This document shows, piece by piece, positions 9,726 through 30,485 of a stretch of DNA of 64,000 nucleotides. Where the stretch lies: positions 42,222,001 through 42,286,000 of the forward strand of contig OZ320322.1 of NCBI GenBank assembly GCA_976226885.1. Direction: 5' to 3'. The notes below the pieces were generated by a model. The model did no database searches. It was not told the DNA's origin and saw only the letters and a list, made by a program, of their open reading frames with translations. Both the position numbers and the translations under genes were made by a program. Numbering within the stretch: position 1 is the first letter of the stretch; the number at the start of each line of letters is the position of its first letter. This DNA is from Iphione sp. A-MEVVRFRX5. Lineage: Eukaryota.

Positions 9726-10821
9726 ATGATGGAGATAGCTGGCAAATACATAATTCGGTCTTATGATCCACATCTGCATGGGAATCGGCATTTTCCTGAA
9801 CTATATATTCACGAAAAGAACGAAGTACATCGTCCAGTAGTATTATACATGAGTGACTATTACTGGAATTGGGAAAAGAACGAAGTACATATGAAGGACA
9901 TACTCGGACCCGCCCCAATGGGACGTCAAGTGGTGAAACGGGGTGATTCTCTCTGTGCTTTATGTGTGATGGATCTTTCTGATCATGCAATGGTGATTAC
10001 TGACGAGATATATGAACTGAAACATCGTCCATTGGAGGTGTATCGTCTGTTCAAGTCCAGCATGCTTGCTTTGAGGAGCATCCTGTTTGACGGCAAACTC
10101 AGTTTACTAACTCAAGCGGGTAATGCAGTCGTAGGAAGCATATGGCACAGTCTATCCAAACCCACCATCGAGTTTATGATCGAAAACGAAGACGGTGTGC
10201 TCGAAGATACCGATGAACATGCCATATATGAACAAATGGGTGATTTCGTAGCAGTTATCCAAGAAACTAATAGGAATGGTGATGCGAATCTGATGGAAGG
10301 AGATGTTAGAGATGCCGATGATGAAGATGATGATGATGAATTCAATGATCATTCTGTATTTTCCCCTTCTCATCTGGTTCGTTTGGTGGAAGATTCCAAC
10401 CTGAAGAAAAGGACCCACGAAAAGATCCAACGGCTCCCTCTCCCTTCGACATTGAAGGATTTTCTAAGTGAAAACATTCTAAAAAACAACCAAGGTCAGG
10501 TGAAGAACTTCGGTCAGGAAGGACAATCCCAAAACTACTGCGACTGGTATGGGATGACAGAGGCACAAGTGGATCGAGTTATTGACAAATTGGAGAGAGA
10601 GAATGAGAAGAAAAATGACAAGGTAAGAAGTTAAATGAATATAAAAAAAAAAAAAAAAAATGCAACGACTAGAACAGAAATTAGTGTATTATATCAATTT
10701 CTTTGTTGTTGAATTATGATAATCTTCAGTGACAAATTTGAAAGCAATAATGAAATTATTTTTTTTATATTTTTTTTTTTGACAGACAAAGGATGATAGC
10801 GCTGCCTGCCACTGTAACTAA
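9726..10821 (+). CDS. Polinton accessory protein A with BC-box and cullin-box-like motifs (putative Elongin BC/cullin adaptor); 302 aa unspliced (ends 10634) or 310 aa spliced
   Basis: ORF 9726-10634. SLLTQAGNAV (10101-10130) fits the BC-box pattern; IQRLPLPSTLKDFL fits the SOCS cullin box. Possible phase-0 terminal intron 10623-10785 (AAG|GTAAGA ... T-tract GACAG|) adding TKDDSAACHCN*. Paralogous to protein B (29698-30485). Confidence 0.75.
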
Positions 10822-11129
10822 ACATATTGAGACGTCTCAGTGATTATCCTCGTCCTCGACTGTATTCGCCCTTGAAGCGACCTGGGATATATTTTTTAGG
10901 TTGTGTTTGGAAGATAGTAAATTAACCATTAATTCCTTTAATGAATTTTTTGTTTATTTTAAATATGTAACTCTTATTCATGAATCTGATCACAATCATC
11001 GAATAAACATTTAGCATTTCAATTTGACCTTTTTTCTTTTCAATTATTGCACCACATCACGGACATGTGATCACATTATGTGACAGTGATGTCAGCATTA
11101 TTATTAACATATTCATGATACAGGCTAGG

Positions 11130-11137
11130 TATATAAA
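11130..11137 (+). promoter_or_regulatory. TATA box of the spliced PolB gene
   Basis: TATATAAA about 44 nt upstream of an ATG in perfect Kozak context (CCACCATGG, 11174). Confidence 0.6.
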
Positions 11138-11173
11138 GGTGTACTATCAATAGCTAACTTAATGTTCTCCACC

Positions 11174-11703
11174 ATGGCTCAAGCTGCAGTTGACCTATTG
11201 AGGAGACTTGTAGCCTCTTTCTCATCCGAGGAGGAACTCATCTCATGGGCTGCAGCGAAGGGATTGATGAATAATCCCATCGTATTGGAGAGACAAAATG
11301 AATTAAGAAGCAATCATTTGAACAGTAGTGAGGTAAGTCCCCAAAAAACTTTCTACTGTACTAATGGATAATTTAACAATTGATTACTATACTGTATATA
11401 CATTTATATAATTCACAAATCATTGCAGGTGGATCTATTGAATAATTTATTGCTACCAACATCCATGCCTTCACAAACCCAGCAATCTCATTCCTCGGAT
11501 AATGTCTTCACACCAAGCAAACAGGATGTTAGTTTTCATTCGAAGACTGATCAAGACGTAAGTAAAGTTTTTTTTTTTTTCTTTGGTATGGTTTAGTAGA
11601 ACTGAGTTTTCTAATCTTTGGATTTGTGCATCACATCATGTACATGTATTCCTTGTATAGACTTCTCAAGATGATCGTACGGCTGATGAAATCACCCAAC
11701 ATT

Positions 11704-11744
<41 letters not shown>

Positions 11745-27393: not shown

Positions 27394-27929
27394 CAGGTGC
27401 TGATTAGTAACTCGTTCTTAATGCATGCTTATATCTTATATTCCGGTTGAACCGTTCGCTTTTATTGAAAGATACATACATATATATATATCAAAACACA
27501 GAAAGAAAACTACATCCAGGTGATGGTTTGGTATATTATATATTAGATAACATCATATTTTGTACTTTGTTGGATATGATGATCTATTTAAGGATGTTAT
27601 AGCGGCAAAGATTTTACTACACAGGCAGGTGCTGATTATATGTCGTCTATGTTCTCTCTCTATATATATATATAACCAAATACAAGAAACTACATCCAGG
27701 TGATGATTTTTTTTTTGTATAGTATGTAATAGATCATTTCATTTTGTATACGTTTTTTGGAGAATATGATCTATTTAAAGATGTTATAGCGACACGTATT
27801 ATACTACACAGGAAGGAGATGATTAAGTGTCGGCTATGTTTTTTTTTCTTTTCGGTGACACTTTGACTGTAGTAACAGTATTCATGTTTGCTATCATGTA
27901 ATTATACTATACCAAACGGGTGATGATTA
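27394..27929. repeat. AT-rich array with a ~180-bp diverged tandem duplication and six GG(T/A)G(A/C)TG(A/G)TT motifs
   Basis: Motifs start at 27396, 27519, 27628, 27699, 27815 and 27919; 27481-27660 resembles 27661-27840. Confidence 0.7.
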
Positions 27930-28320
27930 CTTCATATTTCCATCTGTATTCTAGAAGTGAATGTGATGGACACTGTAGTCGTGATTGAGTTGGTGTTTTT
28001 TTTAAGTAAAAAAGAAAAAGGTGACCAGTTCGGTTTTAATAAAAAGATTTTTTTTATTACCATATCCTATTGTTACATGATGTGATTTCCCTTTATTATA
28101 TACCAAAGTCTTAGTACTCTATTATACGAGATGGACAAATCTCAATGTAATCAATAGATTTACATATGTCAACTAGAACATATTGCTAGTACTTCTACTT
28201 CTAATAATAATACATACTTCTCATAGCAAAACATCTAGTCGTATAAAAGAAATTTCCATCTGAAATTTAAGTATTACTAAGATTTTCTTTAACGGGCTGC
28301 ATCAAACAAAAAAAAGGTTA

Positions 28321-29487
28321 TCATATCTGAGCCAACAAGCAAAACTCGTACTCGAAATGATACATGTGGTAGTGCTCTGTGTCAAGCTCCCCATTCTTAA
28401 TGACACGTCCACAGAGAATGCGATCGACTTTACTAGCATGGTCTTTCTCATTGAAGTCTCTCAAGCATTCAATCGGAGGTGAATGGTTCACCTCGTTACT
28501 CAACTCCAGAAGATTGATCATCATCTGGCTGGTCTCCACTAGTCGTTGGAAGCTGATGCGGATGTGGGCGGCATGCATCACATCAGAACGGGCATGCTCA
28601 GGGATACGACAGGGCGAGCCTCCATCATCAGTCTCCAGGTCGGCAAGTCCTCTTGCTTTCAACAAGTTGTGATATTCGGTGGCAAGAAGAAACACATACG
28701 TCTTCTGGATTACTTCATGCATTGAAATGGTATTGGCAGGAAAGGGAACGTACTCGATATTCTCCCCGTCGACGAGTTCTTTTTGGGCGGTGTCTTCACA
28801 GATCAGCTGATTGATGAAGATGTTCTCGGCCCGACGGGTGAATTGGCTGCCATCTGCTTTCGGTCTCACCATATTGTATGTTCTCCTTAGCAAAGGAAAA
28901 CCAACATCCTTCTTGGTCCGCTCACGCTCTCGTTCGGCCAGAGCAAGGAATGAATTGCTCGAGTCTATTGGATTCCTCTTCATATAATCCAATATTCCTT
29001 CGACTTCGTGGATCAGGAGATTGAAGCAGTCGTAGCTGGGGGAAAAAGAGACAATACACATGGATATAATATTCGATTTTTTTTTATTACATGGAAACAT
29101 TCAATTACAAAATCGGAATGGATTGAATGACAGACATTTATATATAAAAATTGTTAAGCAGGGAGTTCACAAACCAACTTTATGGTTAAAGAGTTAATAT
29201 ATTTGAGGAAAAGAGACTTACTTTATTCTTTGTGCTGCTTCGTCGATCCGTTCAAAGCACACATATGTCCTGCTGGCAAAGTCAGCAAGCTCAATGTGGT
29301 AGGTCTTTTCTTCAGGTTGAACAGTGAGAACGTGACCACAAAGAAGAGTCTCCCATCCATTGCCGGCAGTGTCAAAGACCTCGCGTCGGACTGATAGATG
29401 ACGAGTCGCTTTCCCTATTCTACGAATTTCCAGATGGAGATGCACTCCTCCATCGCATACACGAACTCGCTCGGATATGGTCTCCAT
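28321..29487 (-). CDS. Orphan Polinton accessory protein, spliced (about 326 aa)
   Basis: Exon 1 29487-29222 (METISERV...) and exon 2 29035-28321. Intron AA|GTAAGT ... TGTCTCTTTTTCCCCCAG|C is phase 2 at both ends, joining the two ORF-track ORFs. TATATAAG lies about 46-53 nt upstream. No family recognised. Confidence 0.7.
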
Positions 29488-29697
29488 GTCTGCAGAGCTG
29501 CCGAATGAACCCACGACGTCTCTGTAAGGTATCTTATATACACTGTGCTATGACGTAAGCACTCATCCCACCTAATCTGAAACAAACCCAAAATAAAACT
29601 TTGTTTCAGGGTATCTTATTTCAGCTGATAAACTTAACAAGTCTGAACACGTCTATTTCGTTATCATCTACTTGTATACACGCACACAATTGTTATC

Positions 29698-30485
29698 TTA
29701 TCTAATGAACCCTTGATAACTATCTGACGTCAGCTTTATCATATCTGAAGACGAACCGTTTTATCTATCGAACAAGTTACAACTTGTTTGAACACATAAC
29801 ACTGCAAGCAAACAGGTCGGAACACGCACTTACACGAAATGAATAACCTGCATATTGCAAATGCTACCATACCTGATTTCAATTTTTCATTAATTTCTTC
29901 CTCGTATTTCACATTCCATGTCATCCTGAATGCAACGTCTATGAAGCAATACTTAAAGTGGTTCAGTCGTTTCCTGCAAATATTCTCTTTTATCACTGCT
30001 TTCAATTCTGTAGGGATGTTCAGGGATTCGATATTCTTTTCCACTATATCCATAACACTCAGACCTCTTTCTAATCCGGAATGGGTTGACCGAGACTTTT
30101 CAACCGTGTCATTCCACATGTCCTCCACGAGACGTAAGGCTGAGATATTCAGGAGGGAAAGTTCATTTTTAAATAGTGATTCCCGGACTAATCGGATACT
30201 ATATGAAAACAGACGACAAATGTCCATCAATCTATGGGATAGTGCTTCGAACTGAGCCGACATGTCATCACCTTGGGGAGCAACGAGGGGGTTGATGTTG
30301 ACAGACGAGCAGTCTTCATCAAAAACATCTTCCAATCTCATCGGAATATCTGGAATAAGCTCTTCTTTGTGACGGAGATAGATAAACGGTCTATTCTTAA
30401 TCCCATGTCTTTTGGTATCGAGGGCGGATACAAAATAATGGTCATCTAAATCAAACGAGGGGGTAGTTGATTCTTCTTCAAGCAT
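29698..30485 (-). CDS. Polinton accessory protein B, paralog of protein A with BC-box and cullin-box-like motifs (248 aa unspliced to 29739; about 219 aa if spliced)
   Basis: First ATG at 30485 (the track start at 30536 is TTG). SLLNISALRL (30158-30129) and IESLNIPTELKAVI. Ungapped blocks align with protein A. Possible phase-1 intron 29872-29745 replaces a Cys-rich tail with DMIKLTSDSYQGFIR*. Confidence 0.75.

What the first reader, a model, noticed from the sequence alone, without database searches (positions are those of the whole stretch)
9726..30485. A paralogous pair of split SOCS-box-like proteins at opposite ends: candidate viral E3-ligase adaptors
Seen: proteins A (9726, +) and B (30485, -) align without gaps in three blocks: KYIIRSYDPHLHGNRHFPELYIHEKNEV / HYFVSALDTKRHGIKNRPFIYLRHKEEL; IYELKHRPLEVYRLFKSSMLALRSILFDGKLSLLTQAGNAVVGSIW / FEALSHRLMDICRLFSYSIRLVRESLFKNELSLLNISALRLVEDMW (16/46 identical); and IQRLPLPSTLKDFLSENI / IESLNIPTELKAVIKENI. 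Established: [STP]LxxxC/A/SxxxV/L is the Elongin BC box and LPLPxxLK the Cul5 box; adenovirus E4orf6 and HIV Vif hijack this ligase. Inference: an undescribed adaptor family that degrades host restriction factors, with an unusually long acidic spacer between the boxes in protein A.
Basis: partly seen in the sequence, partly recalled or inferred. Interest (0 to 1): 0.82.

Follow-up and report, generated by a model that had tools for sequence, protein, structure and literature searches.

The report
Mirror-image accessory gene pair in a Maverick
Two distantly related genes sit just inside the two ends of a virus-like Maverick/Polinton element in an animal genome. One carries a convincing cullin-5-docking motif, so it may hijack the host's protein-degradation machinery, but this is not shown.

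Summary
A (9726-10634, +) and B (30485-29739, -) are true but distant paralogues: Smith-Waterman score 102 against 33.5 +/- 5.1 in shuffles, and all three quoted blocks are present. They lie in mirror positions about 1.6 kb inside the inverted ends of a 23.9-kb Maverick/Polinton-type element (8124-32048) in an animal genome.

- A matches the Cul5-box half of Pfam SOCS_box (E 3.6e-4, 21.1 bits, just under the 23.5 cut-off).
- A also fits the published Cul5-box consensus exactly, which happens in 0.025% of shuffles.
- B keeps only a Cul2-type remnant and has no Pfam match.
- The BC-box pattern is conserved in both, but lies 98 (A) and 32 (B) residues upstream, not adjacent as in a SOCS box. It arises by chance in 12-20% of shuffles.
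- No relatives were found in 5.8 and 1.84 billion proteins or in the PDB.
- The AlphaFold models are unusable (pLDDT 37-40).

A third ORF (17980-18306) carries an overlapping exact BC plus Cul5 pattern.

Verdict: a real, orphan accessory pair. Ligase hijacking is plausible for A (about 0.4), weaker for B, and untested.

The parts
8124..8305 (.). Left terminal inverted repeat of the element: 88 nt at 89% identity to the right end, plus shifted short repeats.
8293..8421 (+). Subterminal repeats: a 16-nt unit three times and four AGATAAG motifs. The AGATAAG motifs are mirrored at 31808-31920 on the minus strand.
9726..10634 (+). Gene A, 302 aa. N-terminal strand-rich part and helical core shared with B, then an A-only acidic spacer, a SOCS-box-like C-terminal motif and a hydrophilic tail.
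10101..10130 (+). A residues 126-135: exact BC-box pattern inside the best-conserved block, aligned with the one in B.
10155..10370 (+). A residues 144-215: acidic insertion, largely absent from B.
10395..10466 (+). A residues 224-247: match to Pfam SOCS_box profile positions 15-38. Residues 234-247 (10425-10466) fit the Cul5-box consensus exactly.
29739..30485 (-). Gene B, 248 aa from the ATG. Similarity to A ends about 45 codons before the stop; the rest is Cys-rich and hydrophobic and may not be coding.
30129..30158 (-). B residues 110-119: exact BC-box pattern, aligned with A 126-135.
29979..30032 (-). B residues 152-169: counterpart of A's Cul box. It fits only the Cul2-type pattern (residues 157-165); the first proline of LP-phi-P is replaced.
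31946..32048 (.). Right terminal inverted repeat.
31662..31803 (.). Run of N inside the right subterminal region. Left as it is and not looked up.
17980..18306 (+). ORF C, 108 aa. An exact BC-box pattern (residues 39-48) overlaps an exact Cul5-box pattern (residues 47-60), followed by a basic tail. Not demonstrably related to A or B.
12294..17240 (+). [quoted passage not shown]
17281..17916 (+). P-loop ATPase-like ORF with weak matches to Pox_A32 and RNA_helicase.
18797..19954 (+). Retrovirus-type integrase (rve) with a C-terminal chromodomain.
22031..22528 (+). ORF with a weak match to the adenovirus-type cysteine protease (Peptidase_C5).

Best explanation
A and B are the diverged copies of one accessory gene. 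It once lay in, or was copied between, the two terminal regions of a Maverick/Polinton (adintovirus-like) element.

Shown: each has a shared N-terminal strand-rich part and helical core. Inferred: that part is the target-binding side. Each then has a helix-loop-helix that in A carries a complete Cul5-box.

Inferred mechanism: A acts as a substrate receptor that docks a host Elongin BC-cullin-Rbx ligase through this C-terminal module. Elongin C would be held either by the conserved BC-like helix upstream or by a degenerate helix next to the Cul box. A would so mark a bound host protein for ubiquitination and degradation. B keeps the fold elements but only a Cul2-type remnant, so it either uses another cullin or has lost this activity.

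A and B lack the TATA-type motif that precedes the other genes, and they sit next to the repeat-rich termini. This suggests separate, possibly early, regulation. That too is inferred.
For: - Paralogy.
- Mirror position inside the inverted repeats, both reading inward.
- Element identity: rve integrase plus chromodomain. The polymerase has 307 relatives, several named DNA-directed DNA polymerase or carrying PF03175, from bivalves, a sea cucumber and a ctenophore.
- Pfam SOCS_box match in A: E 3.6e-4 for the whole protein. For a 60-aa piece, 24.3 bits and E 3.8e-5.
- Exact fit of A to the Cul5-box consensus printed in PMC13342108. This occurs in 0.025% of shuffles of A and in only 2 of 96 long open segments of the window.
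- LP-phi-P is the stretch needed for Cul5 binding (PMC4812663).
- The BC-box pattern is conserved at aligned positions in both proteins, inside their best-conserved block.
- Both low-confidence models put the motif in a loop between two helices.
- A second protein of the same element (ORF C) shows a compact BC plus Cul5 pattern.
- Viral proteins that borrow this ligase are well known (PMC4812663, PMC13342108).
Against: - The whole-protein Pfam score is below the gathering cut-off, and the match covers only the second half of the model.
- No BC-box pattern lies directly upstream of the Cul box. The conserved one is 98 (A) and 32 (B) residues away, and the pattern alone arises in 12-20% of shuffles.
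- B has no Pfam match and lacks LP-phi-P.
- There are no relatives in which conservation of the motifs could be checked.
- No PDB relative was found.
- AlphaFold2 gave pLDDT 36.8 and 40.3, so there is no fold evidence.
- In A the motif is followed by about 50 more residues, whereas cellular SOCS boxes are usually at the very C-terminus (own knowledge).
Confidence: 0.4

Rival explanations
1. Look-alike motif. A and B are lineage-specific accessory proteins of the element that act in another way, for example as regulators of its transcription or replication at the termini. The helix-LPLP-helix of A only resembles a Cul5 box.
For: - The Pfam score is under the cut-off and covers half the model.
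- B has lost the defining prolines, yet block 3 stays similar. So the conserved feature may be something other than cullin docking.
- There is no canonical BC box and no structural support.
- A carries a long acidic stretch.
- Adintovirus accessory genes upstream of the polymerase are described as motif-bearing 'Oncoid' genes of other kinds (PMC8502044).
Against: - The Pfam E-value is already corrected for the library, and about 30 proteins and pieces were scanned, so a chance hit of this strength was expected about 0.01 times.
- The exact Cul5 pattern is rare: 0.025% of shuffles.
- It occurs twice in this one element and nowhere else in the window.
Confidence: 0.35
2. The element's ligase-recruiting protein, if it has one, is the small ORF C (17980-18306). 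In ORF C the BC and Cul5 patterns are contiguous. The match in A is incidental.
For: - In C the two patterns overlap by two residues. PMC13342108 describes a BC-box and Cul5-box that share one hydrophobic residue in the African swine fever virus MGF505 proteins.
- Both patterns occur together in 9.5e-5 of shuffles of C.
Against: - C gives no Pfam SOCS_box match at all.
- It is a 108-aa ORF in 50% G+C DNA, where open frames of that size are common: 96 segments of 100 aa or more in the window.
Confidence: 0.1
3. A and/or B are not functional genes but decaying remnants in the variable ends of an endogenised element.
For: - The last 45 codons of B look non-coding: Cys-rich, hydrophobic, with no counterpart in A.
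- The terminal regions are A+T-richer than the core.
- No TATA-type motif lies upstream of either gene.
Against: - Open frames of 302 and 248 codons in about 38-40% G+C DNA are very unlikely without selection.
- The similarity is visible only at protein level, while the DNA of the two ends is alike for only about 200 nt. That is the signature of coding constraint.
- The other long ORFs of the element are open.
Confidence: 0.05

Closest known systems
Cellular SOCS-box substrate receptors (CIS/SOCS, ASB, SPSB and others; Pfam PF07525)
   Same: A has a target-side domain followed by a C-terminal module. Its second half matches the family model and carries LP-phi-P, the stretch that selects Cul5 (PMC4812663).
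   Different: No BC box lies in the adjoining position. The module is not about 40 contiguous residues, the N-terminal domain is an orphan, and the score is just under the family cut-off. B fails the test.
African swine fever virus MGF505 proteins with a SOCS/VHL-box-like motif (PMC13342108)
   Same: These are paralogous genes near the ends of a linear DNA virus genome, identified by BC-box and Cul-box consensus patterns rather than by a family model. In ORF C the BC and Cul5 patterns overlap, much as the paper describes for MGF505.
   Different: There is no sequence relation, the virus group and host are different, and the motif in MGF505-1R is N-terminal. For MGF505-1R, binding was measured; here nothing was.
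Adenovirus E4orf6/E1B55K and HIV-1 Vif (as reviewed in PMC4812663)
   Same: Viral proteins that assemble a Cul5-Elongin BC ligase on host targets. The adenovirus genes also lie at the genome ends, and adenoviruses share morphogenesis genes with Polintons.
   Different: No similarity came back from the Pfam or PDB searches. According to the review, E4orf6 has three BC boxes and no Cul5 box, the reverse of what is clearest in A.
Adintovirus/Polinton accessory genes upstream of PolB ('Oncoid', 'Adintoc'; PMC8502044)
   Same: Same place in the same kind of element (A lies upstream of the polymerase gene). They are fast-evolving and recognised by short motifs.
   Different: Those genes are defined by Rb-binding-type motifs and paired cysteines. 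The paper mentions no SOCS, cullin or Elongin feature, and no mirror copy at the other end.

Membership tests
SOCS box (Pfam PF07525) | Match to the family model at its gathering score (23.5 bits) | tested here: inconclusive
   A as a whole protein scores 21.1 bits, E 3.6e-4. A 60-aa piece scores 24.3 bits. Only profile positions 15-38 of 39 are covered. B has no match even at E <= 10.
SOCS box (Pfam PF07525) | BC box directly N-terminal of the Cul box within one unit of about 40 residues (PMC4812663) | tested here: not met
   Exact BC patterns lie at A 75-84 and 126-135 and at B 110-119. The conserved ones end 98 and 32 residues before the Cul box. The Pfam alignment does not reach the BC part of the model.
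SOCS box (Pfam PF07525) | Cul5 box with LP-phi-P | tested here: met
   Met for A only: residues 234-247 fit the consensus from PMC13342108, against 0.025% of shuffles. B has a different residue in place of the first proline and fits only the Cul2-type pattern.
SOCS box (Pfam PF07525) | Three-helix fold that packs on Elongin C | tested here: inconclusive
   AlphaFold2 with a two-sequence alignment gave pLDDT 36.8 (A) and 40.3 (B). Helices flank the motif, but the models are too poor for a fold search.
SOCS box (Pfam PF07525) | Binding of Elongin B/C and Cul5 or Cul2 | not testable with these tools
   No multimer prediction is on hand and no wet data exist.
Maverick/Polinton (adintovirus-like) element | [quoted passage not shown] | tested here: met
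   307 relatives, the best at 55% identity. Several are named DNA-directed DNA polymerase or carry PF03175. The window's own ORF gives no PF03175 match.
Maverick/Polinton (adintovirus-like) element | Retrovirus-type integrase | tested here: met
   rve E 1.4e-8 and Chromo E 1.9e-8 in ORF 18797-19954.
Maverick/Polinton (adintovirus-like) element | Terminal inverted repeats | tested here: met
   8124-8211 against 31961-32048, 89% over 88 nt.
Maverick/Polinton (adintovirus-like) element | Adenain-type protease and packaging ATPase | tested here: inconclusive
   Peptidase_C5 E 0.0027 and Pox_A32 E 0.019, both below their cut-offs.
Maverick/Polinton (adintovirus-like) element | Double and single jelly-roll capsid proteins | tested here: inconclusive
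   Candidate ORFs 20710-22050 and 24434-25606 give no Pfam, PHROG or PDB match. No structure was predicted for them.
Adenovirus E4orf6 / lentivirus Vif type adaptors | Sequence relation to those proteins | tested here: not met
   No such family or chain came back for A or B from Pfam or from the PDB sequence search.

The most novel reading that the evidence does not exclude
Animal Mavericks carry, just inside both termini, a mirror pair of separately regulated genes, plus a third small protein. These redirect the host's Elongin BC-cullin ligases. That would be the same terminal 'early gene' logic as adenovirus E1B/E4, in the element class from which adenoviruses are thought to descend, using an orphan target-binding domain and a split or compacted SOCS box.
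Probability: 0.25. Interest if true: 0.7.

Novelty: new variant of a known kind. Interest (0 to 1): 0.5.

Why it matters
Accessory genes of Mavericks/Polintons are almost uncharted. In the paper library searched here, no paper links them to SOCS boxes, cullins or Elongins.

If A really recruits a cullin ligase, it would be a first sign that these endogenous virus-like elements actively counter host factors in marine invertebrates. It would also add a functional parallel with adenoviruses to the known structural ones.

If not, the pair is still a clean example of terminal gene duplication and divergence in such an element.

Tried and rejected
- **Word-index protein search** with A and with B: no hit.
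- **Exhaustive HMMER profile search** with the A+B alignment against 1.84 billion representatives: no hit at E <= 0.001. A short motif cannot reach that threshold, so this speaks about whole-domain relatives only.
- **PDB sequence searches** with A, B, A's C-terminal piece and ORF C: nothing meaningful.
- **PHROGs**: nothing.
- **AlphaFold2** for A and B: too poor to use. I ran no fold search, because matches of such models are meaningless.
- **A and B as leftovers of a long inverted repeat still visible in DNA**: rejected; DNA similarity stops after about 200 nt.
- **ORF C as a third paralogue**: not supported. Its score is reached by 175 of 3000 shuffles against A and by 630 of 3000 against B.
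- **Enrichment of a palindromic 8-mer seen by eye near A and B**: not enriched, 28 matches against 26 expected.
- **One literature search was badly framed** and gave nothing useful.
- **Pattern sources**: the motif patterns came from the finding's text. In one search I replaced them with the consensus printed in PMC13342108.
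Full report
**What is there.** The window holds a 23.9-kb element bounded by inverted repeats at 8124-8211 and 31961-32048 (89% over 88 nt). Its genes are:
- a 1648-codon polymerase exon (12294-17240);
- a P-loop ATPase-like ORF;
- an rve integrase with a chromodomain;
- an ORF weakly like the adenovirus-type protease;
- several ORFs with no match.

The polymerase has 307 relatives, the best at 55% identity. Some are named DNA-directed DNA polymerase or carry PF03175. 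The named sources are pearl oyster, scallop, sea cucumber and a ctenophore. A flanking ORF (57697-58326) is an immunoglobulin I-set domain, so the host is an animal, probably a marine invertebrate.

This is a Maverick/Polinton, or adintovirus-like, element as described in PMC8502044. I saw no stops or frameshifts in its long ORFs, but I made no systematic comparison with relatives. One run of N (31662-31803) was left untouched.

**The observation.**
- BLASTP gives E = 3e-8, and each protein finds only the other in the window.
- The local alignment score is 13.5 standard deviations above shuffles. The C-terminal parts alone score as high as the real pair in 8 of 2000 shuffles.
- The DNA of the two ends is alike for about 200 nt only, so the likeness of A and B is kept at protein level.
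- Their start codons lie 1602 and 1563 nt from the respective termini, and both read inward.

The simplest history is one terminal gene duplicated to the other end, or once part of a longer inverted repeat, and then diverged to about 22% identity.

**The SOCS-box claim, in three parts.**

1. *Cul box.*
   - Pfam's SOCS_box model matches A residues 224-247 (profile positions 15-38 of 39) with E = 3.6e-4 and 21.1 bits. The cut-off is 23.5. A 60-residue piece scores 24.3 bits.
   - A 234-247 fits the Cul5-box consensus printed in PMC13342108 at every position. That happens in 0.025% of shuffles of A and in 2 of 96 long open segments of the whole window.
   - LP-phi-P is the part needed for Cul5 (PMC4812663).
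   - B has a different residue in place of the first proline, fits only the looser Cul2-type pattern (found in about a third of shuffles) and gives no Pfam match.
2. *BC box.*
   - The exact pattern is present at aligned positions in both proteins (A 126-135, B 110-119), inside their best-conserved block.
   - But it occurs by chance in 12-20% of shuffles, and it lies 98 and 32 residues before the Cul box.
   - A SOCS box is one unit of about 40 residues (PMC4812663). Pfam finds nothing BC-like directly upstream.
   - By eye, a degenerate BC-like helix ends on the first hydrophobic residue of A's Cul box. It misses two of the four pattern positions.
3. *Fold.* AlphaFold2 with only two sequences gave pLDDT 36.8 and 40.3. 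Both models put the motif in a loop between helices, but they are not fit for a fold search.

**Relatives.** None was found in the word-index search, in the exhaustive profile search of 1.84 billion representatives or in the PDB. The family is therefore an orphan as far as these tools see.

Looking at the DNA next to the polymerase relatives would be the natural next move. I left it out and referred it.

**A new piece of evidence.** A pattern scan of all long open segments turned up ORF C (17980-18306, 108 aa). It sits neatly between the ATPase-like ORF and the next gene.
- It has an exact BC-box pattern overlapping an exact Cul5-box pattern. Both occur together in 9.5e-5 of its shuffles.
- PMC13342108 describes a comparable arrangement for MGF505 proteins, in which the two boxes share a hydrophobic residue.
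- C gives no Pfam match and is not significantly similar to A or B.

Two such rare patterns in one element, and none elsewhere in the window, raise the odds that cullin docking matters to this element. An unknown shared partner for the common short motif is the alternative.

**Regulation (inferred).**
- Five copies of one TATA-type 8-mer lie in the element, four of them shortly upstream of ORF starts. The window holds 7 copies against 1.8 expected.
- None lies upstream of A or B.
- Those upstream regions adjoin repeat-rich subtermini.

This fits a separate, perhaps early, expression class, but no expression data were available.

**Verdict.**
- The paralogous pair and its mirror placement are solid.
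- 'SOCS-box-like' is fair for A's C-terminal motif, weak for B, and not met for the box as a whole.
- 'E3-ligase adaptor' is the best single mechanism (about 0.4) but untested.
- 'Degrades restriction factors' has no evidence.

The splice-looking sites are described only.
- I fetched no related element and did not touch the N run.
- Slip: while reasoning I recalled from memory short consensus strings for the SOCS box, for family-B polymerase motifs and for a transcription-factor site. The evidence above rests on the Pfam model, on the consensus printed in the cited papers and on named search hits. I stopped once I noticed it.

Noticed in passing
17980-18306 (+): 108-aa ORF C with overlapping exact BC-box and Cul5-box patterns and a basic tail. 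No Pfam match, and no significant likeness to A or B.
   Followed up: partly
11129 (+); 23850, 27347, 28103, 29541 (-): One TATA-type 8-mer occurs five times in the element, four of them shortly upstream of ORF starts. The window has 7 copies against 1.8 expected. None lies upstream of A or B.
   Followed up: partly
8293-8421 and 31808-31920: Subterminal repeats: a 16-nt unit with a G+C-rich core three times on the left, and AGATAAG clusters mirrored at both ends. The matching right-hand stretch runs into the N run. To me they look like transcription-factor sites (own knowledge, untested).
   Followed up: partly
12294-17240 (+): The polymerase is fused to C2H2 zinc fingers at its N-terminus and to a NADAR domain (E 4.2e-12) at its C-terminus. 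Both also occur in many relatives.
   Followed up: partly
11130-12290 (+): By eye, a start codon after the TATA-type motif and several donor- and acceptor-looking sites suggest short 5' exons of the polymerase gene.
   Followed up: no
about 10623 (+) and about 29873 (-): Both A and B have a GT donor-looking site right after their last similar stretch. The remaining 45 codons of B's ORF look non-coding. Seen by eye only.
   Followed up: no
18504-18585 (+): A perfect run of 27 CCG triplets gives a polyproline tract in ORF 18297-18824.
   Followed up: no
23076-23316: A triplet and 30-nt repeat tract lies inside the minus-strand ORF 22769-23764.
   Followed up: no
57697-58326 (+): Host-side ORF with an immunoglobulin I-set domain (E 7e-16). 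It marks the host as an animal.
   Followed up: partly
9948-9977 (+): A second exact BC-box pattern at A residues 75-84, in a stretch that B lacks.
   Followed up: partly
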